IMG/VR virus record: IMGVR_UViG_3300035698_029839
Span: 233,711 to 297,710 of that record
Reading direction: 5' to 3' (one strand)
Length of the DNA stretch: 64,000 nt
Shown: in pieces, positions 19,405-39,916 of the stretch
Numbering within the stretch: position 1 is the first letter of the stretch
Layout of the letters: each line of letters starts with the position of its first letter
The notes under the pieces: model-generated
Seen by the model: only the letters and a program-made list of their open reading frames with translations
Told to the model about the DNA's origin: nothing
The model's database searches: none
Position numbers and translations under genes: made by a program

Positions 19405-19475
19405 GCTCGGGTGGTCTAATGGAATGATGACAGATTGCAAATCTGTAGGCGAGAGTTCGATTCTCTCCCTGAGCT
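19405..19475 (+). tRNA. tRNA-Cys(GCA)
   Basis: U73. Confidence 0.9.
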
Positions 19476-20556: not shown

Positions 20557-20588
20557 GCGGGTGTGGTATAATGGCAAAATGCAAGGTT
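20557..20588 (+). pseudogene. 5' half of a tRNA (Gly-like), truncated at the anticodon loop
   Basis: GCGGGTG-TG-GTAT-AATGGCA-AAAT-G-CAAGG-TT ends at the HNH stop codon. Confidence 0.65.
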
Positions 20589-21250: not shown

Positions 21251-21273
21251 TATTACTCCTATAGTTTATTTAT

Positions 21274-21346
21274 GGGAATGAAACTCAATTGGACGAGTCT
21301 CACACTTCCACTGTGGGTGTTGCGAGTTCGAATCTCGTCATTCCCT
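21274..21346 (+). tRNA. tRNA-Gly(TCC)
   Basis: divergent cloverleaf, U73. Confidence 0.8.
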
Positions 21347-21438
21347 TTACTTATATTTCGGCATAAATGATTTGAATTCCTTTATTTTTATGGAAAAATA
21401 ATAAATTCATTTTCGAAAATGGATAAAATAAATTTAAT

Positions 21439-21510
21439 GCGAAATTGGTGTTAATGATAGCACATATGCTTGCCGAGCATAAGGTAAGAGTTTGAATCTC
21501 TTATTTCGCT
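21439..21510 (+). tRNA. tRNA-Gly(GCC)
   Basis: cloverleaf, U73. Confidence 0.85.
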
Positions 21511-21515
21511 TTCAA

Positions 21516-21588
21516 GCCCCTGTACCAGAATTGGCATATGGACTGCGTTTAGACCGCAGGGATGGAGGTTCGAGTCCTCTCGGGGGCA
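21516..21588 (+). tRNA. tRNA-Leu(TAG), short variable arm
   Basis: CTGCG-TT TAG AC-CGCAG. Confidence 0.8.
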
Positions 21589-21649
21589 TTATTTCCAGAC
21601 AAGTGGTTTTTTAATATTATATGATGTTAACTATGTAAAAGAGGTAATC

Positions 21650-22030
21650 ATGAAACGTGTACTAACAATGGATGATATTAGAAAAGGGATGTATGTTACT
21701 GTTCTTCAAGGTAAGATAGAGCAGAAAGTAATCCCTACTCTTAATGGTCCTAGAATCGTTGATAAAGAAAATGATTATTGGAACGGAAAAATTTTAGAAG
21801 TTACTGCTGTTGATATGCCTTATATTGTAGTTAAACTCCATACAAACATGAGTTGTTCTACATATTCTCTTGATGTTAGGATTGTCCAGTTTATGCTTCT
21901 TTCTCCAGAATATATTAAAGCTTGTTGTCCTGATATAAAGATTTCTAAAGATCTTTTTTGGAAGGATATTAAAGATGATTCTATAAAGAATGTTAATACT
22001 ACTATTGAAGAGATTTTTAAGGATCTCTAA
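21650..22030 (+). CDS. hypothetical protein
   Basis: repeat promoter, GAGG RBS. Confidence 0.75.
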   Translation: MKRVLTMDDIRKGMYVTVLQGKIEQKVIPTLNGPRIVDKENDYWNGKILEVTAVDMPYIVVKLHTNMSCSTYSLDVRIVQFMLLSPEYIKACCPDIKISKDLFWKDIKDDSIKNVNTTIEEIFKDL

Positions 22031-22209
22031 CACTGATTTTATGGATATAGAATTACAACAATTAAAAGATGAATTAAGCGTGGTCTCTATGAGATTAGTT
22101 TATGTAACTGAAGATATTTCTATTAAAATGGCTGAAGGGGACAAATTAAATCAAAGAAAAATTGATTTAGTTGAAAAAATAATGAAATTAGAAGATTAAC
22201 AAAGATAAA

Positions 22210-22283
22210 GCACCTGTAGTCTAATTGGAGAGGCACTGCGCTTCTAACGCAGATACATGCGGGTTCGAGTCCTGCCAGGTGTA
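22210..22283 (+). tRNA. tRNA-Arg(TCT)
   Basis: cloverleaf. Confidence 0.9.
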
Positions 22284-22288
22284 ATCAA

Positions 22289-22363
22289 GCTCCCGAAGCT
22301 TAAATGGATAAGCATCTCTCTCCTAAAGAGAAGTTTTTGTAGGTTCGAGTCCTATCGGGAGTA
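22289..22363 (+). tRNA. tRNA-Arg(CCT)
   Basis: cloverleaf. Confidence 0.85.
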
Positions 22364-22368
22364 TTAAA

Positions 22369-22441
22369 GCCCCTATAGTATAATCGAATAGAACATCGGC
22401 CTACGAAGCCGAAGATGGGAGTTTGAGTCTTCCTAGGGGCA
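22369..22441 (+). tRNA. tRNA-Arg(ACG)
   Basis: cloverleaf. Confidence 0.85.
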
Positions 22442-23074
22442 TTATATTAGTTTTTTAATAATGTTTTTTATATCATTAAAAGCTTGTTTTAGTATTTTGT
22501 CATTAGATACTAAATCTGGAATAACTATTAAGTTGATGTTTTTGTTAGTTGCTATTTTAGTTTTTTTAGAGTCTATGTTTTGTATTTTATTTAATTTAGT
22601 TTGACCATAGATAGGTTTGAAATGAACTATACCATTCCATTCAATAGCCAATTTAAGACTAGGGATAGCAACATCTGTTTCTAATCCATTTAACATAATT
22701 TTATCGTTAGCTAAAATAGTTAAATTAGGAAATTCTTTTACAAGTAAATTGTAAAATTTAGTTTCTATTTTAGATCTACGAGATTTCCTTTTTAATTTGT
22801 TATTATAAGTGGCAGCGCAAGATTTAGAACAAAAAGATTTACCTGATTTAGATTTTTTTATTTCTGATGGAAGAGTTGTTATTTTTTTATTACAAGATCC
22901 ACAAAAGGTTTTTACGAGGTTTATTTGTTTTTTATGATTATTAAAGCATTTTCTATTGCAAAAAGTGTGTTTATATCTATAACTATATTTTCTTATATTG
23001 CGAGTATGATCAGCTAAAATTCTTTCAAATAATTTTTTACAGTAGTAACATTTTAATTTAATAACTTTTCGCAT
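22442..23074 (-). CDS. Zn-finger plus PD-(D/E)xK-type putative homing endonuclease
   Basis: CxxC/FCxxxC repeats; ETDVAIPSLKLAIEWNG.VH. Confidence 0.8.
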   Translation of the reverse strand: MRKVIKLKCYYCKKLFERILADHTRNIRKYSYRYKHTFCNRKCFNNHKKQINLVKTFCGSCNKKITTLPSEIKKSKSGKSFCSKSCAATYNNKLKRKSRRSKIETKFYNLLVKEFPNLTILANDKIMLNGLETDVAIPSLKLAIEWNGIVHFKPIYGQTKLNKIQNIDSKKTKIATNKNINLIVIPDLVSNDKILKQAFNDIKNIIKKLI

Positions 23075-23173
23075 AGTTTATATCCTGAATTTATTTTTCT
23101 TATTATTTATATATTCTATTAAAAAATCTTAAATCCTTTTTATTTTTTTTCGAGTCCTGAGTGGGACGTTAAT

Positions 23174-23245
23174 AGGTCGGTGGTGTAATGGCTAGCATAT
23201 TGGTCTCCAAAACCGAAGATTAGGGTTCGACTCCCTACCTTCCTG
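23174..23245 (+). tRNA. tRNA-Trp(CCA)
   Basis: G73. Confidence 0.85.
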
Positions 23246-23371
23246 TTTATTCCAGACAACTGGTTTTTCGTAATGATAGAATAAGAGTAGTTAAAAGAGG
23301 TAGTTTGACATTTCTTTCACTTTTTTATTTTTCTCTTGAAAGTGAAAGGGTGCTGCCATATAATAGATGAT

Positions 23372-23512
23372 GAGCAGTGGTAGAAATTGGTATGGCTACA
23401 ATAACATTAGGTAGTTGTATATATCTAGTGGTTGTGTAAGCATTTATATTGTGAACCCCCTTTTTTAAGGTCAGCGGGTCCAAACCGAAACAGGTTTAAG
23501 CCCTGTCTGCTC
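23372..23512 (+). ncRNA. tRNA-like RNA with large central insertion
   Basis: GAGCAG/CTGCTC, Leu-like D loop, ACAGG/CCTGT T stem; own TTGAAA-N17-TATAAT promoter. Confidence 0.45.
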
Positions 23513-23681
23513 TTTATAAGTTAAATAAGAAATGAGATAGTAGTTTGGTAAGCTAAAAATTAATGACACGGCTGAGGCAGGGCGACCCCCTACTACGTAG
23601 AGATCGACACTTACTTAGATTTATTTTTACCAGAATAAATTGAAAAAGTTAGTTTTTATCTATCTTATTTCTTTTTTATAT

Positions 23682-23754
23682 GCCCAGGTAGGCCAACGGC
23701 AGAGTCAACGGTCTTAAAAGCCGTAAAGTGGAGGTTCAAATCCTCTCCTGGGCA
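23682..23754 (+). tRNA. tRNA-Leu(TAA), short variable arm
   Basis: cloverleaf. Confidence 0.85.
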
Positions 23755-23784
23755 TTACGGTTTTTTAAATGTAAGGAGTAAGAA

Positions 23785-23997
23785 ATGTTAGTATTGAGTA
23801 GACAAAAAAATGAATCGATTATGATTAATGATGGAGATAGACTTATAGAGATCTGTATCGTTGATGTGCGTGGTGATAAGGTTCGACTTGGAATAACGGC
23901 TCCAAAAGATATCCCTGTTCATAGAAAAGAAATTTATGAAGCGATTCAAAGAGAAAAAGAAGAAGAACAGAATAAGGATATTTCAGATCCTCTTTAA
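23785..23997 (+). CDS. csrA: carbon storage regulator CsrA
   Basis: [34 protein letters not shown]. Confidence 0.95.
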
Positions 23998-24003
23998 AGA
24001 TAA

Positions 24004-24076
24004 GCCCAGGTAGCCCAACGGCAGAGGCGGTAGACCCAAAATCTATTTAGTGAGAGTTCGAATCTCTCTCTGGGTA
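24004..24076 (+). tRNA. tRNA-Leu(CAA), short variable arm
   Basis: cloverleaf, C33. Confidence 0.8.
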
Positions 24077-24414: not shown

Positions 24415-26088
24415 ATGATTAAGACAGAGAAAAGAAATTTTGGTATGCATCCTAAGCTCTTGATGGATACCATTCAGAGACAAGCAGGAACACTCCAAAA
24501 AGCCAACCTTGAAGGTGTTATGAATGCTATTGAGGCAGGTAGTCCTGTAGTAAGAATCGAATTTGTAGTAAAGAATGGTATTGCAAGACTTTCCATCGGA
24601 GACGATGGGCGTGGTATTGAATCAAAAAAAGAGGTCGAAGATTTCTTCGAGACCTTTGGAACCCCTCACACTGAAAATGAAACGACTATATGGAAACAAT
24701 TCCGTATGGGTCGTGGCCAAATGTTTGCTTTTGGAAAAAATGTTTGGAGAACATCAACATTCAAAATGATTGTTGATATTAAAAAGCATGGTTTGGAATA
24801 TGAGTTACAAGAAAACCTGCCTTTTGTCAATGGTTGTCAAATCGACATTGAGCTTTATAAAAATCCTGTCGGTTATTCTCATAATAGTATTGAATCATAT
24901 AAAGAATGTATCATGGAACAGGTCAAATTCATGGAAGGTACAATTCTTTTTAATGGGGAGCAAATAAACACTCCTGCTTCTGAATGCTCCTGGGATTTTG
25001 AAGATAAGAATTCCTATTACCTGTTTAATATTGGTGCAGATTTCAAGATATATAATCTTGGAGCATTTGTTATGAAACCCTCTCCCACTGATATGGGAAT
25101 GATGGGCGTAGCTGTTTCCAAGAAACAGTTGAAAGTAAATTTTGCAAGAAATGATATTCAGCATGATTGTGTTACCTATAATGAAATGAAAGCTGTTATC
25201 AAAAAGAATCGTATCAAGAAAACACGGCAGAACAGAAGAAACCTTAATACTTGGGAAAGAATTGCTACCCTCAAAGATTTAAGGGATGGTGGGCAGGAAT
25301 TAAAAGACATACAAACCTTATCTCTTATTCCTACCGCACAAGGGAAATGTATTTCTCTCAATGCTATAAGAAAGTTAAAACAGCAATGGTGTTTTGCTCC
25401 GTTAGGAGACAGATATGCCGATAAGTTAATGGAGAGAGAACAGGCTGTTTGCCTTAACAAGGGAATACTTTCAGACCTTGGTTATACAGGAAAGAAATCT
25501 ATGTTCTTTGTTTGGCTCACAGGTAGTGAAAATGCGTATAGTTATGGTAACACCGAATGGGACGATATCGGAAAACTTTTTGTTGATTTCAAGAGATTGA
25601 GAGACGGAGTATCTGATTCTTATAATATTTTGCCGAATAAAAAATATACTCCCACTGAAAGAAGAATAATCAATGTTATACAAAAGATGAATTGTTGGAC
25701 AGGGAGACAGATATTACTTGGTTATTCTGATACTGCCTCTGCTTGGACAGATGGTTCTACATATATCTGTTTAGACCGTTCCTATCTCAAAGGTAAGAGT
25801 ATGAGTTGGGGTAGAGATATTGGTAGGGTATTATTAACTATGACTCACGAAATGGCTCATGATGAAGATTCAAGAAGAACCCATATTCATGGCCCTGAAT
25901 TTTATGAGAACATGGTGCAAATATTACAGTCTAACAATTCTCCTTTGGCTTATTGTGCTGATTTCAAATATGCTATGGAGAAAAGCAAAATAGAAGAGAA
26001 AAGAACTAAAGAATTAAATAAAATCAAAAAAGCAGAACAAAAAGTAGATGCTAAATTAGGTATTGCAGCAAAAGAAAAGAAAGCATAA
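24415..26088 (+). CDS. GHKL (HSP90/MORC-like) ATPase with C-terminal HExxH motif
   Basis: EGVMNAIEA, DDGRGI, FRMGRG; THEMAH near C-terminus. Confidence 0.8.
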   Translation: MIKTEKRNFGMHPKLLMDTIQRQAGTLQKANLEGVMNAIEAGSPVVRIEFVVKNGIARLSIGDDGRGIESKKEVEDFFETFGTPHTENETTIWKQFRMGRGQMFAFGKNVWRTSTFKMIVDIKKHGLEYELQENLPFVNGCQIDIELYKNPVGYSHNSIESYKECIMEQVKFMEGTILFNGEQINTPASECSWDFEDKNSYYLFNIGADFKIYNLGAFVMKPSPTDMGMMGVAVSKKQLKVNFARNDIQHDCVTYNEMKAVIKKNRIKKTRQNRRNLNTWERIATLKDLRDGGQELKDIQTLSLIPTAQGKCISLNAIRKLKQQWCFAPLGDRYADKLMEREQAVCLNKGILSDLGYTGKKSMFFVWLTGSENAYSYGNTEWDDIGKLFVDFKRLRDGVSDSYNILPNKKYTPTERRIINVIQKMNCWTGRQILLGYSDTASAWTDGSTYICLDRSYLKGKSMSWGRDIGRVLLTMTHEMAHDEDSRRTHIHGPEFYENMVQILQSNNSPLAYCADFKYAMEKSKIEEKRTKELNKIKKAEQKVDAKLGIAAKEKKA

Positions 26089-26207
26089 AGCACTGAATAG
26101 ACAAGAGTTATAAAAAGTTTCTTTATTTCTTATTTTTACTCTTGACAAAAAAGTGAAATTAAGTATAATAGTAACATTGAAAGTGATTTATATAGAAAGG
26201 GTTTGTT

Positions 26208-26495
26208 ATGTATCCAGTATTCGTCCTGTTGGGGCTATTAATATTAGCCATATGGTTAGTTGTTAAGTTGCTAAAAAGTGCAAAGTTTGACAAGTGGGTT
26301 AAAGACTTGTGTAGTGGGAAAGTTAACACCGAATCACCCAAAGATATTATCAAAGATATTACTAAAGATGAAGATGTTCTTGGGAAAAAGGTAGAGAAGA
26401 ATAAGGAAGTGGCTAAAAAGCTCACAGAAGAATCATCAGGTATTACAGATTTTCTTGGTAGAAAAGAAGAATCAACAGAGAAGGAGGGCAGTTGA
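26208..26495 (+). CDS. small membrane-anchored protein
   Basis: N-terminal TM; TTGACA/TATAAT promoter. Confidence 0.7.
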   Translation: MYPVFVLLGLLILAIWLVVKLLKSAKFDKWVKDLCSGKVNTESPKDIIKDITKDEDVLGKKVEKNKEVAKKLTEESSGITDFLGRKEESTEKEGS

Positions 26496-26603
26496 TGGTA
26501 TAGACTATGGAGGTTGTCTTACATGTGTATGGTAGTAAATGTTGTAGTAAACGTTGTAGTTAAACAAAAATGTTAATATTAAATTAAATTTGGAGCAAAG
26601 GTT

Positions 26604-27938
26604 ATGAAACCTAAACACATTATTATTTTAGCGATTATCGCAATCGCGTGTATCATCGTGGTCTCGTTATTCACAGGTTTTGTTAGTGTTAACGATGGTC
26701 AAAATTGGGTATATCTCCAGTATGTCAACGGAACAGTTAGAATTGTTGATGAGCCTGGGATGTATATGAAAGCTTTTGGTAAGACAAGGGTTTATCCTCG
26801 ATTTATTGAATTTCGTTACAATGATGATCCAGATGACGGAGATAAATCTAAAGAGTCTATCGAAGTTACATATAATGATGGTGGTATGGCAGATGTATCG
26901 ACTTACATTCGTTTAGCAACACCATCATTGAAAGAAAACCGTATCAAATTTCATCAGCAGTTTGGTGGTAATAAGGACAACATTAAGGCATCGACAAAAT
27001 CTTATATGATTGATTGTCTAAAATCGACAGCACCGTTAATGAGTTCTTCAGAAAACCAGTCGGCTCGTAAAGCAGAATTTAAGCAAGTTGTAGAAGGCCA
27101 ATTGAAAAAAGGCACATTCAAAATGCGTAAAGAGCAGATTGTTAGAAAAGACGTAACAGACAAGACGGGTGAAGGCATTACTATTTTTAAGACCGAGATA
27201 GTTAATGATAAAGATGGAATGCCTATTGTCGTTACCTCTTCTCCTATTACTGAAGATTTCGGAATGACAGTTGTTCAGTTTTCTGTTACAGCAACAAATT
27301 ATGACCCAGATACAAAGAAACAGTTTTCAGCTAAGAAAGCATCGTTCTTACTTACGGAACAGGCTAAAGCTGATCGTGAGAAAGAGACTCAAGAACGTCT
27401 GATGGTTGTAGAGAGAGGCTTAAGAGAGAAAGCTGAAGAGACTGCAAAAGCTAATGTATTGAAAGCTAAAGCAGTTATTGCGGCTGAGTTAAAAGCTGAA
27501 GTTGCTCTTCAAACTAAACTTCAAGCTGAAACCGCGGCGGCTATGCAATTATCTGTTGCAAAAATTAACAAAGCAGAACTGTTGATGATTGCAAGTGCTA
27601 AGCTTGAAGTAGCTCAGATTAAGGCTAAAGAAGCTGAACAGGAAAAGATTGCAGCAATCCTGAGAGCAGAAGGTCGTAAGGAAGCTATCGAATTATCAGG
27701 TGATATTACTGAACTCGAAGAAGCTGTGATTGCCGCTGAAGTTAATAAAGCAGCAGCAGTTGCCGAAGCTATGGCTAAGATGCGTGGTCCTGAAGTTGTA
27801 ATCTTTGGTTCAAAAAGTGAAGGTGGTGGCGGTAACGATATCACTCAAGCTCTTTTTCAGTTAAGATTAATGCAAGATGCAGGTCTTATCAAGAAAGTTA
27901 ATGTTGATTCATCAAAGGTTCAGCGTAAAGTTAGGTAA
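26604..27938 (+). CDS. SPFH/band-7 (flotillin-like) membrane protein
   Basis: N-terminal TM, PG.Y.K.FG, AEA-rich coiled coil. Confidence 0.8.
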   Translation: MKPKHIIILAIIAIACIIVVSLFTGFVSVNDGQNWVYLQYVNGTVRIVDEPGMYMKAFGKTRVYPRFIEFRYNDDPDDGDKSKESIEVTYNDGGMADVSTYIRLATPSLKENRIKFHQQFGGNKDNIKASTKSYMIDCLKSTAPLMSSSENQSARKAEFKQVVEGQLKKGTFKMRKEQIVRKDVTDKTGEGITIFKTEIVNDKDGMPIVVTSSPITEDFGMTVVQFSVTATNYDPDTKKQFSAKKASFLLTEQAKADREKETQERLMVVERGLREKAEETAKANVLKAKAVIAAELKAEVALQTKLQAETAAAMQLSVAKINKAELLMIASAKLEVAQIKAKEAEQEKIAAILRAEGRKEAIELSGDITELEEAVIAAEVNKAAAVAEAMAKMRGPEVVIFGSKSEGGGGNDITQALFQLRLMQDAGLIKKVNVDSSKVQRKVR

Positions 27939-27972
27939 TATATTACACCCCATGACCTCCATGGGATACTAT

Positions 27973-28007
27973 AAGCCCCTCTATCGTAATGGTAGCGGGG
28001 TTTTTTT
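27973..28007 (+). terminator. intrinsic terminator
   Basis: GC hairpin plus T run. Confidence 0.75.
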
Positions 28008-28087
28008 ATAATTCCAGACAAGTGGTTTTTTATTGCGGTGGTATGAGAAATGAAATAAAATGAAATTATTAGAAATGGAGAAATGAA

Positions 28088-28849
28088 ATGTTAAAAAAAG
28101 ACGTGCCAAACGGAGTTATTATCTATGAAGGGCCTAGTGTTATAGATGGTGAGCCAATTGTAGTAATTGCTAATAGTTTCAAGACTAATAAGAACCGTAA
28201 AATAGGGGATATGATACAAACATGGATTTTACGATCTGATATTCATCCTAATGACGCTCTTAAAAGTGGTGACGATTTTAGTATTTGTGGGGATTGTATT
28301 CATCGTGGGAAGTACGTAAAAGAAACTGATACAGTTACAAATAGGACTTGTTATGTAAACTTATATCAGCAAGGCGTTTTCTCTATTTACAATGCTTATA
28401 AACGTGGCTCTTATCCTGTTTGTGATATTAAGTATTTACAACTCTTTCGCAATAGGCATGTTAGAATTGGTTCATATGGTGACCCTGCAGCAGTGCCTAT
28501 TTATGTATGGGATAGTATTACAAAATTCAGCAAAGATTATACTGGGTATACACACCAATGGAAATTTTGCGATTACCAATATTCTATGTATTGTATGGCT
28601 AGTTGTGAAACTGAAACCGAACAAAATCTTGCTGATATTCATGGGTGGAGAACTTTCAGGATTATCAAAGATGTTGACACCGAATTAATAGATGGGGAAA
28701 TGCGTTGTCCTGCTCAAACTCATGGGACTCATTGCGACAAGTGCGGTATTTGTAATGGTTCTATGTCAAACCGTAAAAATATAGTTGTAGTCTTTCATGG
28801 TGCGCAAGGTCGTGAAAAACAATATCTTTCTAAAGTATCATGTAAATAA
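28088..28849 (+). CDS. Cys-rich conserved phage protein (gp88-like, possibly Fe-S)
   Basis: N.KIG, ICGDC, TCYV, RIGSYGDPAAVP, GYTHQW, CPAQ..CDKCGIC. Confidence 0.65.
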   Translation: MLKKDVPNGVIIYEGPSVIDGEPIVVIANSFKTNKNRKIGDMIQTWILRSDIHPNDALKSGDDFSICGDCIHRGKYVKETDTVTNRTCYVNLYQQGVFSIYNAYKRGSYPVCDIKYLQLFRNRHVRIGSYGDPAAVPIYVWDSITKFSKDYTGYTHQWKFCDYQYSMYCMASCETETEQNLADIHGWRTFRIIKDVDTELIDGEMRCPAQTHGTHCDKCGICNGSMSNRKNIVVVFHGAQGREKQYLSKVSCK

Positions 28850-28912
28850 TTCCAGACAACTGATTTTTTAATAGTATAGGTTGTTAATGATAATAAATTT
28901 TGGAGAAACAAA

Positions 28913-29302
28913 ATGACTGAAAATGAAAAGAATAAAGGTCCTTTATATGTGTATTGCCATGATTGTGAAACATTATTGGCAAAATGCTATGACATAAGCT
29001 CTGCTCACGTTGTATGCGCTGCTCATCGTAAGGACGAGCATAGTGGTTGCACAGTTACTACTGGTAATAAGTATTATTTTGATAATGTTTTTCCTCATAT
29101 AGAGTTAGAGCCTAATAAGGTTCTTCTTACTGTTCTTGGTGGTGTTGTTGATCTTGTTAATAAGCCTTTTGGTATTGAGGTTGAGATCAGGGATTTTGAT
29201 GTTGAGGGTATAGATGCAGAGGGTGATGAGCGTTGTAAAAAAGACTCTAATGGTGACTGGTATCAAGAAATGCTTTGGGAATCAACAGTAGAAGTATTAT
29301 AA
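28913..29302 (+). CDS. hypothetical protein
   Basis: C-terminal V.GG..DFDV.G.D motif shared with 37007. Confidence 0.75.
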   Translation: MTENEKNKGPLYVYCHDCETLLAKCYDISSAHVVCAAHRKDEHSGCTVTTGNKYYFDNVFPHIELEPNKVLLTVLGGVVDLVNKPFGIEVEIRDFDVEGIDAEGDERCKKDSNGDWYQEMLWESTVEVL

Positions 29303-30546: not shown

Positions 30547-30872
30547 TATAAATATTTGATTTTTATTTATAGAGTGCTTAAATAGAATAAATCAACGTAT
30601 GGATTCACTGGAGATTGAGAAGTTAGCAGATTAATTTTGGAGTTAATAAGATGTTAAATGTAGAGTGTGTAGATAAAAAAGAAAACGGTGTGGAGATAGT
30701 CTTTTCAGATCCAGATGGAGATGAGGCTATTAAGGTGTGTGTTTCTGAGAAAACTGCTTGGAATTTGGAGAGAGAAATTCAAAGACAACGCTATGCGGCG
30801 AAAAAAGAATAATTCCAGACAAGTGGTTTTTTATTATTATAAGTTGTTAATATAATTTTTTAGGAGAAAAAA

Positions 30873-32207
30873 ATGCCAGTAGTAATAGAACATAAAAAAT
30901 TTAGTTGCACAAAGTTGGGTAGCAATAATAATAAGTTTTGGAACGTAACACTTTATGATAATGATGATGTTATGTCAGAATGGGGAAGACAGGGGAAAAC
31001 CTCACAATCTAAAACTTGGCCAGGTGTGGGTCGTTCTTTTATGGAAAAGAAGATAGAAGAAAAGAACAAAAAAGGGTATCATGAAAACCAAGTAGTCGAA
31101 GGGTCTGGGGAAGTTTCAATATCAGGACATAAAGTTGCTAACACTGAATTAAAAGATATAGCAGCTAAGCAAATAAAATCTAAAAATCCTATCGTAGCAA
31201 AATTAGTTAGTTTTTTAGTCGATGTAAACGCTCATGCTATACATAAAGCAACAGGCGGTAAAATTACATATGATACAAGCTCCGCTACGTTCAAAACTAC
31301 ACAAGGAGTAGTTATACCATCGCAAGTTACAAGGGCAAGAGATTTGTTATCTACTATGTACGATTATGTTAAAAATAACAAATTTGATATGATAGAGGAT
31401 AATTTGAACGAATACTTATCTTTGATTCCGAGAGATTTTGGTATGCACAAGATGAGTCCTTCTGATATTCTTCCAGATGTTGCAGCTGTTGGAGCAGAGA
31501 ATGATATTTTAGATGGTTTGGATTCTTCTTTTGCAGGATTACAAACGTCCACACCGAAAAAGAAAACGACGAAGAAAACAACAAAGAAAAAAGATACTCC
31601 ACAGATTTTTGATGTAGAAATGGGTATTGTTACAGATAAGAAAATCATATCTCATGTCAAACATCTTTATCAATCAACACGCAGAAGTATGCACCAGTCC
31701 AACAGTTTATCTGTACAAACAGTTTACTCTGTAACTATCAAGACAGTAAAAAATGCTTTTGATAGTCATGGAGCAAAGATGAAAAATATTTGGCAGTTGT
31801 GGCATGGTACAAAAGCAAGTAACCTTTTGTCTATTATGAGACAAGGTTTGATTATACCACCGTCAAGCTCTGGACATGTAACAGGTCGTATGTATTCAGA
31901 TGGTGTTTATTTTTCTGATATTAGTACTAAAGCATTAAATTATGCCACTAATTATTGGGGAGGTGGGGGTAGTACTGATAAAACATTTATGTTCTTAGCA
32001 GATGTTGCGATGGGAAAATATCATATAGCTAAAGATTCATGGACTAATTATCCTGTCTCTGGTTCAGATAGCACTTGGGCTAAAGGTAGAGACAAGGGAG
32101 GTGTTAATAGTGGCGTAATAAATGATGAAATGATAGTATATCGTACCGATCAGTGTAATTTGGTTTACCTTGTCGAATTTGTACCAAGGAATCAGCTTAG
32201 GAAATAA
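30873..32207 (+). CDS. WGR-domain PARP-like ADP-ribosyltransferase
   Basis: NNNKFW..EWGRQG (WGR), YLSLIP (regulatory domain), LWHGT / G.MY.DGVYFSD..K..NY / DEMIVY (H-Y-E triad). Confidence 0.9.
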   Translation: MPVVIEHKKFSCTKLGSNNNKFWNVTLYDNDDVMSEWGRQGKTSQSKTWPGVGRSFMEKKIEEKNKKGYHENQVVEGSGEVSISGHKVANTELKDIAAKQIKSKNPIVAKLVSFLVDVNAHAIHKATGGKITYDTSSATFKTTQGVVIPSQVTRARDLLSTMYDYVKNNKFDMIEDNLNEYLSLIPRDFGMHKMSPSDILPDVAAVGAENDILDGLDSSFAGLQTSTPKKKTTKKTTKKKDTPQIFDVEMGIVTDKKIISHVKHLYQSTRRSMHQSNSLSVQTVYSVTIKTVKNAFDSHGAKMKNIWQLWHGTKASNLLSIMRQGLIIPPSSSGHVTGRMYSDGVYFSDISTKALNYATNYWGGGGSTDKTFMFLADVAMGKYHIAKDSWTNYPVSGSDSTWAKGRDKGGVNSGVINDEMIVYRTDQCNLVYLVEFVPRNQLRK

Positions 32208-32867
32208 ATTCCAGACAAGTGTTTTTTGTTTTAGTAGAATGTAAATAATAATATTAATTTTTCGGCGAAATAGAATGACATATACAGAAACTTACAAAAT
32301 AAAAGTAACAACTTATATAAGAATTAAGTATGATGATGGAGCAAGAGATGGAATTCTTATTGAGAATGAAAAGGATAGTGATTATGTGAAAGTGTTTTTT
32401 CCTGTAGAGATGACAATAGAAGTAATTACTAGAGATATGATTTATAAAGCAGGGAAAATGATGGAAATTAATTTTAATAATTCTGGTTTGTGGGAATAAT
32501 AAAATCCAGATGAATAAAAATTAGTTTGTATGAAATGTTGAAGTAAATAATAATCTTTCGGAGAAAATCATGAATGTGAGAAAAATAGAAATATATATAA
32601 ATCTTTGTGATAGTAGGCGTAGATTCCAAGTTGTAGATGATGATAGCTTTAGTAAGGACATTAAATGTGCCTATGATCTTACTAAAAATTGTTCTCCTGA
32701 ATGTGCAACATGTAGGATATGGGGATCTTCCAAGAAAGCGTCATGCGACAGGGTAGGAGAGGGTTTTGATATAGGCTCTCTTGAATAATTCCAGACAAGT
32801 GGTTTTTCAATAGTATGGTATAGTGAAGTATAAAAACTAATAATATTAAATAATGGAGAAACGAAAA

Positions 32868-33452
32868 ATGTGTACAGTATTAGCAGCAACATCAATTTTA
32901 GAAATTCTTCAAGAAGGAATGAAGAATGGAGAGGTTTTTACCTCTTTTGATATCACTGTTGGAGCAAGGGCCGTAGTCTCTGATAAGGTCTTTCACAGTG
33001 ATGTTAGACGTATCGTTAATGGAGAATTTGATAATGGCGAAATGGCTAGCTATAATAGAGAGCTTTGTTCTCTTAATATTCCTTCAAGCCCCCAAGCTTT
33101 TGTCTTTTTCCCTGATGGAAAATTGGCAACTGACCATCCTCTCGTATCAGACAGCACCGACCCTAATGATGGTACGGATGATGGTACGGATGGCACTGTA
33201 TCGGTTGTCCTCGATGATGATGAGTATAAGCTCACCAAAGATGGACGTGTCAACATTCCTAAGAAACTTTTCAGCCAGATCGTGCCTAGTGCGGGTAGTT
33301 ACGATGTGCTTGTGAACGGCAGTTTGAAAAGTGTTGCACCGAACAAAGACGGACGTGTAAGGCTCTGCCTTATACGAATCGGTATCAATGACAGCAAAGT
33401 TAAACTTTCAGTCGATACCACAAACAATACTATCAATCTTGAAACTATTTAA
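32868..33452 (+). CDS. hypothetical protein with AbrB-like C-terminal repeats
   Basis: TKDGRVNIPK and NKDGRVRL. Confidence 0.6.
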   Translation: MCTVLAATSILEILQEGMKNGEVFTSFDITVGARAVVSDKVFHSDVRRIVNGEFDNGEMASYNRELCSLNIPSSPQAFVFFPDGKLATDHPLVSDSTDPNDGTDDGTDGTVSVVLDDDEYKLTKDGRVNIPKKLFSQIVPSAGSYDVLVNGSLKSVAPNKDGRVRLCLIRIGINDSKVKLSVDTTNNTINLETI

Positions 33453-33568
33453 TAGTTTCGACTAATTCCTACTGATAAGGGCAAGTTAATAGCTTGCCCT
33501 TATAATTCCAGACAAGTGATTTTCTATTTTGGTATAGTGTTAATGTTATTTTATATTGGAGAAATAAG

Positions 33569-34270
33569 ATGAATAGAAATATGTTATATGTAGAATATCC
33601 TTTGGCAAGGTCATTATTTGAAGCTATTGAGTGTCTGGAAAATGGAGGAAGTGTCTGGCAGGAAATATCAGATGATTTTCCTGATTGTGCAGGATTTGAT
33701 ACTTCCGAAGATTTAGCAGATAATTTTCCTGATGATGAAATTGAGGAGTATGATTTGATTCATCTTGTTCCTAAGGGGTTGGAATCAATTCCAGCAAGAC
33801 CTTTCGTAATAGAAGAAACGGTCTGGGCAACAGAAAGATTCTTCATTACAAATGATTTATATATGCACAAGGGAGACTCTTATAAGATAGTCGAAATTAG
33901 TGATGATGGTAAGAGTATCAAACTTGATGTTCCTAAAAATGAACAAAAGGACACGATGTGGCCTGCTGATAAATTTTGCAGATGTGTACTTCCTGTAGAT
34001 AAGAAAAAAGTCTATGCTCTGGCTGATATGACAAGTAGTAGTGTAGGATATGATTTGGACAATGTTTATGAAGATTTGAGTTTCCTCAAGGAAGAGTGTG
34101 ATGGAGATACTGTTTGGTCTGATAGTTATCAAAATGAAGATGAATTCATAGATTATATGAAATCATTGGGACATAGTGTATCAGGAATAAATTGGGATAT
34201 TGTAGGATATGGTAGAGAAACAGGAGAATTAGTCTATGCGATTCAGCAATGTTTCTTGAGAACAAGATAA
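33569..34270 (+). CDS. hypothetical acidic protein
   Basis: repeat promoter, GGAG RBS. Confidence 0.75.
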   Translation: MNRNMLYVEYPLARSLFEAIECLENGGSVWQEISDDFPDCAGFDTSEDLADNFPDDEIEEYDLIHLVPKGLESIPARPFVIEETVWATERFFITNDLYMHKGDSYKIVEISDDGKSIKLDVPKNEQKDTMWPADKFCRCVLPVDKKKVYALADMTSSSVGYDLDNVYEDLSFLKEECDGDTVWSDSYQNEDEFIDYMKSLGHSVSGINWDIVGYGRETGELVYAIQQCFLRTR

Positions 34271-34589
34271 TTTTTATTGATTTTATTTCTCCAACATGAG
34301 GAGCGTGGTTGATTCCATGCTCCTCACTCCATTTCCAGACAAGTGGTTTTTTATATTGGTAGATTATGATAAAAGAAATAAAAAAACTTAGAGAGCAAAC
34401 AAATAAAGCAGAAGTTGCTTTGTATCAGGCAGTTATGGATTTAGGCAATCATATGAATAAGTGCAATTGTGATGATTTGCATTTTTCGAGTTCAGTTAGA
34501 TATGATTTTGTTAATACTATTTCTCATCATGAGGTTCATACATTTTGTCTTAATTGTGGTGGATTTATTACTTTAACGGAGATATAAAA

Positions 34590-35162
34590 ATGCCAGTAAA
34601 AGAAAATCCTACAAGAGATGTCAAATGCAGATGTGGTAAAACAACTACTGTTAATATTGAGCCTGCAATAGCATATTGCAAAACTACAAGATTTGTTTGT
34701 GAGTGTAAGAAAGTGGTTCATATTACAGATTATTGCAATGGCTGTATCACTTATATGTTTCCCTCTAAAGAGGTAGATGAAGCTTTTCTCAAAATGAGGG
34801 AAGAAGATGAGGAAAGAAAGAATAAAGATAGGAAGAGATGTACGGGTCGTATAGCAGATTTTTACACTTTTATAGATGAAATACCTGTTGGTACAAGACT
34901 TTCTACTATTGAAGATTGTAAAAAGTGCGATGGAATGAAAGGTTGTGGAGTATCACAGCATTGTTTAATAACAGAAAAACAGATACAAAGAAAATGTTTT
35001 AATCATTGTCCTAGATGTGATGCTGGTGAAAATGATATTGAGTGGGGAGAAAAAGATTGGTCTGATGAATCAGCTTGGCAAGACGCTGTTTGTAAGAAAT
35101 GTGGGTGTATGTTTTCAGAAGTATATATTTATAGTTGTTCAGAAATTGATGCACCGATATAG
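34590..35162 (+). CDS. Cys-rich Zn-finger protein
   Basis: multiple CxC/CxxC; GGAG RBS before ATG 34590. Confidence 0.7.
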   Translation: MPVKENPTRDVKCRCGKTTTVNIEPAIAYCKTTRFVCECKKVVHITDYCNGCITYMFPSKEVDEAFLKMREEDEERKNKDRKRCTGRIADFYTFIDEIPVGTRLSTIEDCKKCDGMKGCGVSQHCLITEKQIQRKCFNHCPRCDAGENDIEWGEKDWSDESAWQDAVCKKCGCMFSEVYIYSCSEIDAPI

Positions 35163-35221
35163 TTTCCTAATGGATAATTCCAGACAAGTGATTTTTTGTT
35201 ATTATAGGTTGTTAATAAGAA

Positions 35222-35338
35222 AAAAGAATAAGGTTGTAGTTCAACTGTCAGAATGATGGACTAGGCTCTGTTGAGAAGTCGCAATTTTCTATCCTAGTTA
35301 CAAGATGTGGAATCGAGACCACCAATTCTTATTCTTTT
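35222..35338 (+). ncRNA. tRNA-like RNA in a repeat cassette
   Basis: 11-bp outer stem, D-arm-like TAGTTCAACTGTCAGAAT, T-arm-like GTGG/CCAC. Confidence 0.45.
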
Positions 35339-35362
35339 ACTAATTTATTTTTTGGAGAAAAA

Positions 35363-35677
35363 ATGAGTAATTTAGCTTATATACAAACAGTTGAAGTAAA
35401 GAAAACCTATGCAGAAGAAATAGTTATAGATGTAAGAGTCTGGGATAATTTTACTGAGGGAGACTCTTATATAGGAGAAAAGGGACAAGTAGGAGATAGG
35501 GGAGTTGATGTAAAAGATGATATGTCTATTCTCCAGTATTGTAAAGATATTGGTTCTGATGATAGTGCTAGTATTTGTAGTGTAATAGATAGTATTCTCG
35601 AAAATAAAAAGGGTGTAGAAATCAATGGCACTTTTTATGAGTGGGACGAAATAAAACATATATTTCCAGACAACTGA
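35363..35677 (+). CDS. hypothetical protein
   Basis: ends FPDN* inside the repeat. Confidence 0.7.
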   Translation: MSNLAYIQTVEVKKTYAEEIVIDVRVWDNFTEGDSYIGEKGQVGDRGVDVKDDMSILQYCKDIGSDDSASICSVIDSILENKKGVEINGTFYEWDEIKHIFPDN

Positions 35678-35955
35678 TTTTTTAATAGGGTAGAATATGG
35701 ATGATAAAATTCTAAAAAATTTAATAGCTATCATAGAGAATTTTGATTTTCAGGTTATGTGGAATGCTGATTTTGGAAAATATTGTGTTCTTCGTCATAT
35801 AGTCCATTATATTGATGGTGAAGCAATGGTTAATTTTAGAGATTTTAGAGCAAAACATATAGACTTATATAATTGTTCTATGGATGATTTTATATTTTTT
35901 CGGAAATCACAAATGACAGAAATATTAAAACATATAAAAAAGTGAGGGTATTAAA

Positions 35956-36729
35956 ATGACTAATGGAACATTAAAAACAGTAGTAGGCGATGTTACTAAT
36001 CCTCAAAGACTGACACCGAATGAGGTAGTAATTATACCTCATTGTTGTAATAATAAAGGTGTGATTGGTGCAGGAGTAGCTTTAGCACTTAAAAAGAAAT
36101 GGCCAGAAGTAGAAAAAGAGTATATGTCTGGTTCTTTAGAGCTTGGTTCTGTTTCTTGTGCTGTATTAGATGATGGAGTAGTTGGCCCGAATCAGGAAAA
36201 TCCTAAAGTAACAACTGTCATTTATAATATGATAGGTCAAGATGGAACTGTTTCTACTATTAATTCTAAACCTGTTAAGTATTGGGCTTTAGTAAAGGCA
36301 ATGAAAATTATTGAGGGAAGATGTGAAAATATAAGAAATTGGAATTGGTTTCCTGGATGGAGTCCTAATCCTGTTATCCATTGTCCTAAATTTGGTTCTG
36401 ATCTCGCTGGTGGCAATTTCGATTTCATATTAGAGTTAATAAGAGAAATATGGATAGAGAATGGTATAGATGTAGTCGTGTATGAGTTTGTACCTAAAAT
36501 AAATGGAGAAAAAATGAGTAAACAAATTTGTAAAGTATTAATTAGGAATTTACATGGAGATCCACAAGTTATTGGATGGATCAATGAATCTGAGGTTGCC
36601 CCGATGTTAAGGCTTAATCAGCAATATAAGATTAAGGGGAAGCCGATGTTTATGGTTCAAGCTATTCCTTATCTCGATATTACTGATGCTGTTCAAATAG
36701 TTTTATCATCTGATGAGTTTGACAAGTAA
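35956..36729 (+). CDS. macrodomain (ADP-ribose binding/hydrolase) protein
   Basis: VGDVT, HCCNNKG.IGAGVA.AL.KKWP, PKFGS.LAGG. Confidence 0.85.
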   Translation: MTNGTLKTVVGDVTNPQRLTPNEVVIIPHCCNNKGVIGAGVALALKKKWPEVEKEYMSGSLELGSVSCAVLDDGVVGPNQENPKVTTVIYNMIGQDGTVSTINSKPVKYWALVKAMKIIEGRCENIRNWNWFPGWSPNPVIHCPKFGSDLAGGNFDFILELIREIWIENGIDVVVYEFVPKINGEKMSKQICKVLIRNLHGDPQVIGWINESEVAPMLRLNQQYKIKGKPMFMVQAIPYLDITDAVQIVLSSDEFDK

Positions 36730-37006
36730 TTCCAGACAACTGATTTTTTAGTTATGTAGGTTGTTAATGATAATTTTTCTTGGAGATAAAAATGAGTAAA
36801 ATGAAAATTGCTATTTTGTTTGAAGCCAACGGTTCTGGAGATACAATAAATAGAACTTGGGGAGAAGATATTATCGAATATAGTAAAACCGATGATATAC
36901 AAAACATTCTTGATGAAGCAATAAATAAAACAAATGAAGCATTAGAGGAAGTCCAAACTTCTGATAGGGCTGTACACTCTTTTGTTTTAGAATTTTTGGG
37001 GAAATA

Positions 37007-39064: not shown

Positions 39065-39916
39065 ATGAAGATACAAACATTTTCAGTTGTAGTCGGTGGT
39101 AAAAAATGTAATGCTCATTGTCCTTATTGTGTTTCTAAAATGACTGGGTTAGAAGATTGTTCAGAAACAGGATATATTAATGAGCGTAATTTTCACAAGG
39201 CCTGTCAGTTTGCAAAACAATCTGGAGTTAGTACTGTATTATTAACAGGTAAGGGAGAACCTACTCTTTATATGAATCAGATTGATAGGTACCTTAACAT
39301 ATTAGAACAGTATGATTTTCCTTTTATAGAGCTTCAAACAAATGGAATGGATTTGCCATTACATAATGAAGAGTTATTTAATTGGTATAATAAGGGTATG
39401 ACTACTGTTTGTCTTTCTTGTGCTCACTGGTTGACAGATAGGAATAGAGAAATTTTTGGAGAGTTATTTGAACCTTTGGAGAAGAATATAAACCGCTTGC
39501 ACCGAGCAGGACTTTCTGTGAGAGCAAGTTGTGTAATGTGTAAGGATTATATTGATAATGCATCATCAGTAGGGGCTTTTGCTTTGTGGTGTAAAGAACA
39601 TAAAGTAGAACAATTCACTGCTCGTCCTGTCGGCATTGATGAAAATAGTGATAATGAGAAAATCAAAGAATGGGTTAGAGAACATTCTATATCTAAAATA
39701 CAACAAAAAGAAGTAGAAACACTTTTTGAAAAGGTTGGTTTTCTTTTGTTGGAATTAGCTCATGGTGCTAAAGTATATGACTATTATGGACAAAATGTCT
39801 CTATAAATAGTTGTCTCACTCATAGTCCAGATCCTGATGATATTAGACAGTTGATATTTTCTCCTGATGGTCATTTAAGATATTCTTGGGTGTATGATGG
39901 TGCTATTATAATCTAA
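39065..39916 (+). CDS. radical SAM protein
   Basis: CNAHCPYC, TGKGEP, LQTNG. Confidence 0.9.
   Translation: MKIQTFSVVVGGKKCNAHCPYCVSKMTGLEDCSETGYINERNFHKACQFAKQSGVSTVLLTGKGEPTLYMNQIDRYLNILEQYDFPFIELQTNGMDLPLHNEELFNWYNKGMTTVCLSCAHWLTDRNREIFGELFEPLEKNINRLHRAGLSVRASCVMCKDYIDNASSVGAFALWCKEHKVEQFTARPVGIDENSDNEKIKEWVREHSISKIQQKEVETLFEKVGFLLLELAHGAKVYDYYGQNVSINSCLTHSPDPDDIRQLIFSPDGHLRYSWVYDGAIII

What the first reader, a model, noticed from the sequence alone, without database searches (positions are those of the whole stretch)
30873..36729. Phage PARP1-like writer with a nearby macrodomain eraser
Seen: WGR, helical regulatory and catalytic H-Y-E domains in one ORF, with a macrodomain gene about 4 kb downstream in the same repeat-driven region. 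Known: H-Y-E PARPs can polymerise ADP-ribose upon DNA binding; macrodomains reverse ADP-ribosylation such as DarT marks. Inference: a phage-encoded reversible ADP-ribosylation circuit for host takeover or counter-defence.
Basis: partly seen in the sequence, partly recalled or inferred. Interest (0 to 1): 0.6.

Follow-up and report, generated by a model that had tools for sequence, protein, structure and literature searches.

The report
Huge-phage PARP with linked macrodomain hydrolase
A very large salt-lake bacteriophage carries a PARP2/3-like ADP-ribosyl transferase and, 3.7 kb downstream, a TARG1/SCO6735-type macrodomain hydrolase; both kinds of phage gene are already known, and that the two act as a pair is plausible but not shown.

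Summary
ORF 30873-32207 encodes a 444-aa WGR / helical regulatory / catalytic PARP with H311-Y346-E419 invariant in 31 relatives. ORF 35956-36729 encodes a macrodomain (aa 1-180) plus a 77-aa tail. Pfam's Macro model misses it; sequence and fold searches place it with SCO6735, BT1257, TARG1, ALC1 and DarG. Both genes lie in a stretch full of one repeated intergenic cassette.

The record is a fragment (about 62% complete) of a huge phage from salt-lake metagenomes.

- **For a pair:** all seven close relatives with DNA in hand (PARP 44-78% identical) keep the macro on the same strand, six of them 1.5-6 kb downstream. Three Klebsiella phages also hold both within 6 kb. SCO6735 removes PARP-made glutamate-linked ADP-ribose in vitro.
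- **Against a pair:** only 1 of 40 other viral records with this macro family has a PARP. 14 of 17 complete PARP phages have some macro, against a published base rate of 40-56%. This macro class also erases DarT marks on DNA, and phage macros are proven anti-DarT factors.

Verdict: new members of known kinds. The writer/eraser reading is partly supported, at about 0.4. "PARP1-like" overstates it: there are no zinc fingers or BRCT. A clade-specific, probably AbrB-like protein always follows the PARP.

The parts
30873..32207 (+). PARP gene (444 aa): WGR, helical regulatory domain, Lys/Thr-rich linker, ART domain
   Evidence: Pfam PARP 1.9e-25, WGR 1.7e-6, PARP_reg 1.1e-4; phrog_23333 4e-48; PDB PARP1/PARP2; fold match 4dqy_C TM 0.67
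30906..31091 (+). WGR domain (aa 12-73), W37-G38-R39 at 30981-30989
   Evidence: Pfam WGR above the curated cut-off; G38 and R39 invariant; codons checked
31155..31532 (+). Helical regulatory (HD) domain, about aa 95-220
   Evidence: Pfam PARP_reg aa 108-217; helices 92-219 in the model; aligned to the PARP1 HD
31533..31601 (+). Lys/Thr-rich disordered linker (aa 221-243) between HD and ART
   Evidence: pLDDT below 50; K-rich consensus kept in relatives
31605..32204 (+). ART catalytic domain (aa 245-444); H311 at 31803-31805, Y346 at 31908-31910, E419 at 32127-32129
   Evidence: H, Y and E invariant in 31 sequences; aligned to PARP1 H862, Y896 and E988; codons checked
32868..33452 (+). Clade-specific PARP-adjacent protein (194 aa from the ATG with a GGAG site; the longest ORF starts at 32853); C-terminal half probably AbrB/SpoVT/MazE-like
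   Evidence: Follows PARP in L002, L003, L030, L031 and L032; family of 91 proteins, at least 15 on contigs of the same length as PARP contigs; one member hits PF04014 at 2.8e-4; weak structural leads
35697..35945 (+). 82-aa ORF that starts inside a cassette copy and ends 10 nt before the macro ATG; probably co-transcribed with the macro
   Evidence: ORF list; cassette at 35661-35710; no family hit
35956..36495 (+). Macrodomain (aa 1-180), TARG1/ALC1-like class, SCO6735/BT1257 subclass; H29, N32, Q95 and G147 conserved
   Evidence: PDB phmmer 5e3b 1.7e-10; Foldseek 2afc/5e3b/TARG1/DarG; invariant columns; Q95 lies where DarG, TARG1 and AdfM have the catalytic Lys
36496..36729 (+). C-terminal extension of the macro protein (aa 181-257) plus the stop codon; function unknown
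   Evidence: Absent from the nearest relatives; low pLDDT of 36-61; other family members carry different extensions
30810..30859 (+). Intergenic cassette copy upstream of the PARP gene
32205..32233 (+). Cassette copy whose TAA is the PARP stop codon
   Evidence: (family D4)
35661..35710 (+). Cassette copy upstream of the 82-aa ORF / macro pair
36727..36776 (+). Cassette copy whose TAA is the macro stop codon

Best explanation
A conserved accessory-gene block of a huge (probably about 480 kb) salt-lake phage encodes two active ADP-ribose enzymes.

Step 1 (shown by homology): the PARP has the WGR-HD-ART layout of PARP2/3 and of the bacterial PARPs from Herpetosiphon and C. difficile, with an intact H-Y-E triad.

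Step 2 (inferred): its WGR domain binds DNA breaks or ends in the infected cell, for example a degraded host chromosome, phage genome ends or replication intermediates. This releases HD autoinhibition. The ART domain then uses NAD+ to ADP-ribosylate itself and DNA-associated host or phage proteins. Whether it makes polymer or single units is open.

Step 3 (shown by homology): the downstream macrodomain belongs to the SCO6735/BT1257 subclass of TARG1/ALC1-like hydrolases, with Gln in place of the catalytic Lys.

Step 4 (inferred): it strips the protein-proximal ADP-ribose from acidic residues. That would reset PARP-made marks and limit self-damage. The same enzyme may also erase host DarT marks on phage DNA.

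No PARG is present, so any chain removal would be by the macro at the protein link or by the ARH/DraG-family hydrolase encoded about 62 kb upstream.
For: Domain and triad evidence. Macro class.

Linkage: the macro is present in 7 of 7 close relatives with DNA, on the same strand, 1.5-6 kb downstream in six and 15 kb away in G004. The Klebsiella phages 05F01, FBKp34 and KP13-16 also hold both genes 2-6 kb apart, and G016 holds them 8 kb apart. 14 of 17 complete PARP-bearing phage genomes have a macrodomain.

Regulation: both genes sit behind the same cassette type.

Chemistry and related genes: SCO6735 removes Glu-linked ADP-ribose from PARP1 E988Q (PMC5087735). Bacterial WGR-HD-ART PARPs are DNA-dependent and active in vitro (PMC8120803, PMC5966428). 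An ARH-family gene is in 4 of 5 clade genomes, and NAMPT is in the 3 complete ones.

Reality of the locus: it is collinear and near-identical in several salt-lake runs.
Against: No activity data exist for any phage PARP in the library searched. The macro family is found without a PARP in 39 of 40 other viral records, and in none of 50 other loci is a PARP within 10 kb. Conserved order inside one clade may be plain vertical inheritance. Enrichment over the published 56% macro base rate is weak (binomial p about 0.02 without correction for relatedness). The Xanthomonas and Stenotrophomonas jumbo phages keep the two genes more than 200 kb apart. Ser904 of PARP1 is Ala354 here, so NAD+ binding may differ. 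Gly128 of SCO6735, whose G128E mutant is impaired, is Asp149 here, though that position varies within the family. No transcript data exist: no RNA run holds the locus.
Confidence: 0.42

Rival explanations
1. The two genes work independently. The macrodomain is an orphan antitoxin-like counter-defence enzyme that removes host DarT2 ADP-ribose from thymidines in phage ssDNA, as AdfM of PhiKZ and AdfB of ICP1 do. The PARP acts on its own targets as a host-takeover ADP-ribosyltransferase, as T4 Alt and Mod do. Their proximity is inherited gene order within an accessory region.
For: SCO6735, the closest solved relative, efficiently reverses DarT thymidine ADP-ribosylation and rescues E. coli from DarT (PMC9411070). 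Phage macros are proven anti-DarTG2 factors (PMC13309987; PMC11481870). AdfM is a distant homologue (hhalign probability 95%). The macro family is nearly always PARP-less. Eight ORFs and several cassette copies lie between the two genes.
Against: The order PARP, conserved protein, macro is retained over PARP divergence down to 44% identity. Proximity also appears in Klebsiella phages and in G016. The host and its DarTG status are unknown. The macro has Gln, not the DarG/AdfM Lys, although SCO6735 also has Gln and still acts on DNA.
Confidence: 0.38
This would cap phage genome ends or nicks against host exonucleases. The macrodomain uncaps them before ligation, replication or packaging. The adjacent AbrB-like protein helps target DNA.
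For: WGR domains of PARP2/3 read 5'-phosphorylated breaks, and the model aligns to break-bound PARP1 and PARP2. TARG1-class macros act on nucleic-acid ADP-ribose (PMC9411070). A probable DNA-binding protein is strictly PARP-adjacent in the clade.
Against: There is no direct evidence. The complex prediction for PARP with the adjacent protein gave no verdict. The DNA-binding fold assignment is weak.
Confidence: 0.1
3. The macrodomain serves RNA repair or NAD metabolite clean-up, as an ADP-ribose-1''-phosphate phosphatase like Poa1p or an O-acetyl-ADP-ribose deacetylase. It would be unrelated to macromolecular ADP-ribosylation.
For: The PHROG label is 'phosphatase', and JGI names relatives 'O-acetyl-ADP-ribose deacetylase'. 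Poa1p is among the fold matches. The phage invests heavily in tRNAs and a tRNA nucleotidyltransferase.
Against: KptA/Tpt1, the source of ADP-ribose-1''-phosphate, is found in only 1 of 5 clade genomes and far from the macro. The best matches are SCO6735 and BT1257, not Poa1p. The database names are automatic labels.
Confidence: 0.07
4. The PARP is catalytically dead or serves only as an NAD+ or DNA-end binder, and the locus has no ADP-ribosylation role.
For: S904 of PARP1 is replaced by Ala. The D-loop and several loops are modelled at low confidence.
Against: H-Y-E, G312, K353, N356 and Y357 are conserved across more than 30 diverged sequences, and more than 1,000 full-length relatives exist. 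That is the pattern of purifying selection on an enzyme.
Confidence: 0.03

Closest known systems
Bacterial PARPs (Herpetosiphon aurantiacus HaPARP, Clostridioides difficile CD160 CdPARP) and the human PARP2/PARP3 core
   Same: WGR, helical regulatory domain and ART in one chain of about 440 aa, with an H-Y-E triad. PARP1 K903 and E988 have conserved equivalents. The fold aligns to break-bound PARP1 WGR-CAT and to PARP2 (PMC8120803).
   Different: It is phage-encoded. A Lys/Thr-rich insert lies between HD and ART. Ala stands at the PARP1 Ser904 position and Asn at Tyr986. There are no zinc fingers or BRCT (so it is not PARP1-like in the strict sense) and no basic N-terminal extension as in PARP2. 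No PARG partner is present in the genome, unlike Herpetosiphon and C. difficile.
Phage PARP/PART genes already noted in jumbo phages (XacN1 BBA65562.1, Xoo-sp13, Cellulophaga phi4:1, Aeromonas Aeh1; Klebsiella FBKp34)
   Same: The same family: 30-34% identity over 95% of the length to XacN1, Xoo-sp13, CM1, RAS14 and the Klebsiella phages. These genes were described computationally in PMC4245714, PMC7824862 and PMC9503650.
   Different: This gene belongs to a large uncultured clade (more than 1,000 metagenomic relatives) of huge phages. That clade has its own fixed neighbourhood: PARP, an AbrB-like protein, then an SCO6735-type macro.
SCO6735 (S. coelicolor) and BT1257 macrodomains; TARG1/ALC1-like class
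   Same: These are the best sequence and fold matches. Equivalents of His24, Asn27, Gln85 and Gly126 are conserved (H29, N32, Q95, G147). As in SCO6735, the catalytic Lys of TARG1 and DarG is replaced by Gln.
   Different: About 28% identity. Asp149 stands at the Gly128 position. There are two insertions (aa 66-88 and 121-137) and a 77-aa C-terminal tail. Activity is untested.
Phage anti-DarT macrodomains AdfM (PhiKZ gp104) and AdfB (ICP1)
   Same: A stand-alone phage macrodomain of the DarG/TARG1 superclass. It is a homologue at the profile level (probability 95%, 23% identity over 124 columns).
   Different: AdfM keeps the DarG-type Lys where this protein has Gln. AdfM phages are not reported to carry a PARP. 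No DarT context is known for this phage's host.
T4 Alt/ModA/ModB host-takeover ADP-ribosyltransferases
   Same: Phage-encoded NAD+-dependent modifiers, presumably of host proteins.
   Different: They belong to a different ART clade (R-S-E), have no DNA-sensing WGR or HD, make mono-ADP-ribose on Arg, and have no dedicated phage eraser.

Membership tests
DNA-dependent PARPs (PARP1-3 / bacterial PARP type) | ART domain with the H-Y-E triad | tested here: met
   H311, Y346 and E419 align to PARP1 H862, Y896 and E988 and are invariant in 31 relatives
DNA-dependent PARPs (PARP1-3 / bacterial PARP type) | WGR domain N-terminal to the catalytic region | tested here: met
   Pfam WGR 28.5 bits against a cut-off of 22; W37-G38-R39 present; fold aligned to the WGR of 4dqy_C and 6x0l_P
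DNA-dependent PARPs (PARP1-3 / bacterial PARP type) | Helical regulatory (HD) domain preceding the ART | tested here: met
   PARP_reg 22.8 bits, below the 26.8 cut-off for this sequence but recorded for most relatives; helices 92-219 in the model; aligned to the PARP1 HD
DNA-dependent PARPs (PARP1-3 / bacterial PARP type) | DNA-stimulated NAD+-dependent (poly)ADP-ribosylation | not testable with these tools
   Needs an enzyme assay with and without activated DNA
PARP1 proper | Zinc fingers Zn1-Zn3 and a BRCT domain N-terminal to the WGR | tested here: not met
   The protein starts with the WGR at residue 1; no other Pfam domains are found
Macrodomain, TARG1/ALC1-like class (SCO6735 subclass) | Macro fold with closest similarity to SCO6735, BT1257, TARG1, ALC1 and DarG | tested here: met
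   phmmer 5e3b 1.7e-10; Foldseek 2afc 8e-12 with target-normalised TM 0.85; aa 1-180 at pLDDT above 90
Macrodomain, TARG1/ALC1-like class (SCO6735 subclass) | SCO6735 active-site residues His24, Asn27, Gln85, Gly126 and Gly128 | tested here: inconclusive
   H29, N32, Q95 and G147 are conserved and invariant in the family. The Gly128 position is Asp149 and varies in the family (D, A, N, K, E, L)
Macrodomain, TARG1/ALC1-like class (SCO6735 subclass) | Hydrolysis of Glu/Asp-linked or thymidine-linked ADP-ribose | not testable with these tools
   Needs assays on automodified PARP and on DarT-modified oligonucleotides
DarG / AdfM-type anti-DarT macrodomain | Catalytic Lys (DarG K80) in the loop after beta-5 | tested here: not met
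   Gln95 aligns with the Lys of AdfM and DarG. DarG models give only 19-22 bits against cut-offs of about 250
Complete PAR cycle (PARP + PARG) | A PARG (canonical or bacterial type) in the genome | tested here: not met
   PF10021 gave no hit in G000-G004 while the Deinococcus control rang. PF05028 gave no hit, but its control was silent. G000 is only about 62% complete
Writer/eraser gene pair | Co-occurrence and proximity beyond what shared ancestry explains | tested here: inconclusive
   Kept in 7 of 7 close relatives and near each other in Klebsiella phages and G016. But the macro has no PARP in 39 of 40 other records, and PARP phages have a macro in 14 of 17 against a base rate of about 50% (PMC9503650)

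The most novel reading that the evidence does not exclude
In this clade of huge salt-lake phages, PARP, the clade-restricted AbrB-like protein that always follows it, and the Gln-type macrodomain form one DNA-end-sensing module. The PARP is switched on by DNA ends or nicks. It marks DNA ends or DNA-bound proteins, with the small protein acting as co-factor or main substrate. The macro resets the mark. This would be a phage-borne, PARG-free ADP-ribosylation cycle acting on DNA transactions during infection.
Probability: 0.12. Interest if true: 0.7.

Novelty: new member of a known kind. Interest (0 to 1): 0.35.

Why it matters
PARP-like genes in phages have been catalogued since 2014, but no paper in the searched library tests one. 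If the phage PARP is DNA-activated and the neighbouring macrodomain reverses its marks, that would be the first viral writer/eraser pair of the PARP type in a prokaryotic setting. It would also bear on the idea that eukaryotic PARPs descend from phage or bacterial conflict systems.

If the macro is instead an anti-DarT enzyme, the locus adds a Gln-type (SCO6735-like) member to the known phage anti-DarT macrodomains. Either outcome can be tested with two recombinant proteins. Cultured Klebsiella phages that carry both genes offer a genetic system.

Tried and rejected
- **Nucleotide search:** megablast of the locus against cultured phages found nothing. A single-sequence pattern scan of IMG/VR also found nothing; the alignment-based scan worked.
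- **Pfam Macro:** it does not detect this macrodomain, so absence calls made with PF01661 alone would be wrong. I used the family profile A2 as well.
- **Neighbouring genes:** Pfam, PHROG, NCBIfam and PADLOC scans of the ORFs between and around the two genes gave no ADP-ribose-related function.
- **PARP-adjacent protein:** PDB profile searches gave nothing usable. The Atlas gave only weak AbrB/B3-like leads.
- **Complex prediction, PARP with the adjacent 199-aa protein:** no verdict (score 0.00 against a mark of 0.32). This counts neither for nor against binding.
- **Missing partners:** no PARG of either type, no DarT, and KptA in only one relative. The PF05028 and DarT controls were silent, so those two blanks are uninformative.
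- **Non-coding RNA:** Rfam on 28-40.5 kb found no match. The ORF-free stretch 35218-35345 folds no better than shuffles (z -0.9).
- **Reads:** the 'joints' reported all have short sides (under 30 nt) at copies of the intergenic cassette. I read them as repeat cross-matches, not deletions. No RNA run holds the locus, so expression and transcript starts could not be examined.
- **Rejected reading:** a eukaryotic giant virus origin for the PARP. The record has GGAG ribosome-binding sites, PHROG replication genes and phage relatives with terminal repeats.
- **Not used:** the large representative protein search, because family assignment was already clear.

Full report
**What is in the window.**
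The window is the last 64 kb of a 297,710-bp IMG/VR virus record that CheckV rates about 62% complete. It has about 31% G+C and almost all genes on the + strand. It carries 33 tRNA genes at 12.3-24.1 kb. Elsewhere the record encodes phage-type DNA polymerase, helicase and tRNA nucleotidyltransferase. Genes are preceded by GGAG ribosome-binding sites. Related IMG/VR records are 300-550 kb, and several have direct terminal repeats. The same stretch is held, collinear and nearly identical, by at least 14 salt-lake metagenome runs from 2017-2019. It is therefore a real, persistent, huge phage of a salt-lake bacterium. The host is unknown.

**The PARP gene.**
ORF 30873-32207 gives a 444-aa protein.
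- Pfam finds the PARP catalytic domain (E 1.9e-25), WGR (above the curated cut-off) and the PARP regulatory domain. The last is just below the cut-off here but is recorded for most relatives.
- phmmer against PDB aligns residues 12-382 to full-length PARP2 and 131-387 to the PARP1 catalytic fragment. In those alignments LWHG matches H862, GVYF matches Y896 and NDEMIVY matches E988.
- In an alignment of 31 relatives at 54-80% identity, H311, Y346 and E419 are invariant, as are G312, K353, N356 and Y357.
- The AlphaFold model (pLDDT 74) matches the WGR-HD-CAT chain of PARP1 on a DNA double-strand break (TM 0.67) and PARP2 on a bridged break.
- There are no zinc fingers and no BRCT. The layout is that of PARP2/3 cores and of the bacterial PARPs HaPARP and CdPARP, which are DNA-dependent and active in vitro (PMC8120803, PMC5966428).
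- Features peculiar to this protein are a disordered Lys/Thr-rich linker between HD and ART (aa 221-243) and Ala at the PARP1 Ser904 position.

**The macrodomain gene.**
ORF 35956-36729 gives 257 aa.
- Pfam's Macro model misses it. phmmer finds SCO6735 (5e3b, E 1.7e-10) and BT1257.
- The model has pLDDT above 90 for aa 1-180. It matches BT1257, SCO6735, the ALC1 macro, TARG1, Poa1p and DarG.
- The SCO6735 residues His24, Asn27, Gln85 and Gly126 are H29, N32, Q95 and G147 here, and they are invariant in 37 relatives.
- Where DarG, TARG1 and the phage anti-DarT protein AdfM have a catalytic Lys, this family has Gln, as SCO6735 does.
- SCO6735 removes Glu-linked mono-ADP-ribose from PARP1 E988Q (PMC5087735). 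It also removes DarT-made thymidine-ADP-ribose from ssDNA (PMC9411070).
- Residues 181-257 are an extension that the nearest relatives lack and that is poorly modelled. Other family members carry other tails.

**The repeats.**
A cassette, (TAA)TTCCAGACAAGTGGTTTTTT, 6-8 nt, TATAGGTTGTTAAT, 10-15 nt, GGAG, 6-8 nt, ATG, fills the intergenic gaps. It occurs 13 times in 28-40 kb, and 49 of the record's 66 + strand copies lie at window 8.5-50 kb. Its TAA is often the upstream stop codon, and that holds for both PARP and macro. The PARP gene has its own copy. The macro follows an 82-aa ORF that starts inside a copy. What the cassette is (promoter, terminator-promoter, processing site) was not resolved.

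**Is the pair linked?**

*Within the clade, yes.* Seven relatives had DNA available, with PARP 44-78% identical: IMG/VR records G001-G004 and metagenome loci L030-L032. Every one has the macro on the same strand. In six it lies 1.5-6 kb downstream, and in G004 it is 15 kb away. A 190-212-aa protein (window 32868-33452) follows the PARP in five of the seven. Its family has only 91 members, and at least 15 sit on contigs of the same length as PARP contigs. Its C-terminal half looks AbrB/SpoVT/MazE-like, on three weak grounds: the motif GRVNIPKKL, one member hitting PF04014, and weak structural leads.

*Outside the clade, the picture is mixed.* Three Klebsiella Stephanstirmvirinae phages hold both genes 2-6 kb apart, and G016 holds them 8 kb apart. 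XacN1, Xoo-sp13 and RAS14 hold them more than 200 kb apart. Of 17 complete PARP-bearing genomes, 14 have some macrodomain. Published base rates are 56% for jumbo and 40% for medium-sized phages (PMC9503650). The binomial p is about 0.02 without allowing for relatedness.

*In the reverse direction the link fails.* Of 53 IMG/VR loci with this macro family, only the three clade members have a PARP within 10 kb. Of 40 records outside the clade, only one has a PARP domain anywhere.

**Other ADP-ribose genes.**
The clade has an ARH/DraG-family hydrolase. In this record it lies at G000:201824-202516, about 62 kb upstream of the PARP gene and outside the window. The complete genomes also have NAMPT and canonical MacroD-type macros. 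No bacterial-type PARG was found, and the control for that search was positive.

**Interpretation.**
Both enzymes are very likely active, because their catalytic residues are under clear conservation. The most economical model is a DNA-break-activated ADP-ribosyltransferase whose marks can be removed at the protein link by a TARG1/SCO6735-type hydrolase kept beside it. I give this about 0.42.

Nearly as likely (0.38) is that the macro is an orphan anti-DarT, or more generally anti-host-ART, enzyme like AdfM and AdfB (PMC13309987, PMC11481870), and that gene order is simply inherited. The two readings do not exclude each other, since SCO6735 does both reactions. Minor rivals are DNA-end capping by the PARP, metabolite clean-up by the macro, and a dead PARP.

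**Novelty.**
Phage PARPs were listed by Perina et al. 2014 (PMC4245714). Iyer et al. discuss them in jumbo phages, citing the XacN1 protein that is one of the best hits here (PMC7824862, PMC9503650). TARG1-like viral macros and phage anti-DarT macros are also known. These are therefore new members of known kinds.

Two things seem undescribed in the library I could search. One is the fixed PARP, AbrB-like protein, Gln-type macro neighbourhood in a large uncultured huge-phage clade. The other is any biochemical test of a phage PARP. The library is incomplete, so this is not proof of absence.

Noticed in passing
window 8500-50300 (e.g. 28009-28058, 30810-30859, 36727-36776): A roughly 45-nt intergenic cassette, TTCCAGACAAGTGGTTTTTT..TATAGGTTGTTAAT, occurs 49 times on the + strand here and 66 times in the whole record. 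It often begins with the upstream gene's TAA stop. A sub-class has the ATG inside the cassette (GGTAGATTATG) with no ribosome-binding site. The nearest relatives share it (L030 23 copies, L003 16, L002 10). It has no sigma-70-like spacing and no real hairpin, so its role as a promoter or gene-end signal is unresolved.
   Followed up: partly
window 32868-33452 (+): A clade-restricted 194-aa protein sits directly after the PARP in most close relatives. Only 91 family members exist in 5.8 billion proteins. Its C-terminal half is probably AbrB/SpoVT/MazE-like and DNA-binding. The complex prediction with the PARP gave no verdict.
   Followed up: partly
window 24415-29302 (+): A gene block upstream of the PARP is conserved in all close relatives. 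It comprises a 557-aa protein (relatives show weak HATPase_c_3 hits), an SPFH/Band-7-like 444-aa protein (phrog_11908), a 253-aa protein (phrog_2554) and a 129-aa protein. In relatives a CsrA-like gene precedes it.
   Followed up: partly
window 12299-24076: A cluster of 33 tRNA genes, all on the + strand, covering most amino acids.
   Followed up: no
G000:C1:201824-202516 (outside the window, about 62 kb upstream of the PARP gene): An ADP-ribosylglycohydrolase (ARH/DraG family, PF03747 E 2e-34) is present in 4 of 5 clade genomes. It is a second candidate eraser.
   Followed up: partly
relatives G002 (44-47 kb), G003 (45-48 kb), G004 (141 kb): The complete relatives carry NAMPT/NAPRTase, next to a canonical MacroD-type macro in G002 and G003. 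This looks like an NAD+ salvage module. It was not found in the incomplete G000 and G001 records.
   Followed up: no
window 36496-36726 and relatives in alignment A2: Macro family members carry varied C-terminal add-ons: zinc ribbons, a YacG-like domain (PF03884), and a recurrent roughly 80-aa module ending in FFG plus an acidic tail. The window's own 77-aa tail is only faintly similar to that module.
   Followed up: no
window 39065-39916 (+): A radical SAM protein with weak MoaA/viperin-like hits lies 7 kb downstream of the PARP. Klebsiella phage 05F01 and one metagenomic relative also have a radical SAM gene near their PARP. Possibly coincidence.
   Followed up: no
window 35178-35362: A cassette copy is followed by about 185 nt without an ORF or ribosome-binding site. 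There is no Rfam hit, and the fold is no better than shuffles (z -0.9).
   Followed up: yes
window 31533-31601: A Lys/Thr-rich disordered linker (TPKKKTTKKTTKKKDTP) lies between the HD and ART domains of the PARP and is conserved in character across relatives. It may be a DNA-binding or automodification segment.
   Followed up: no
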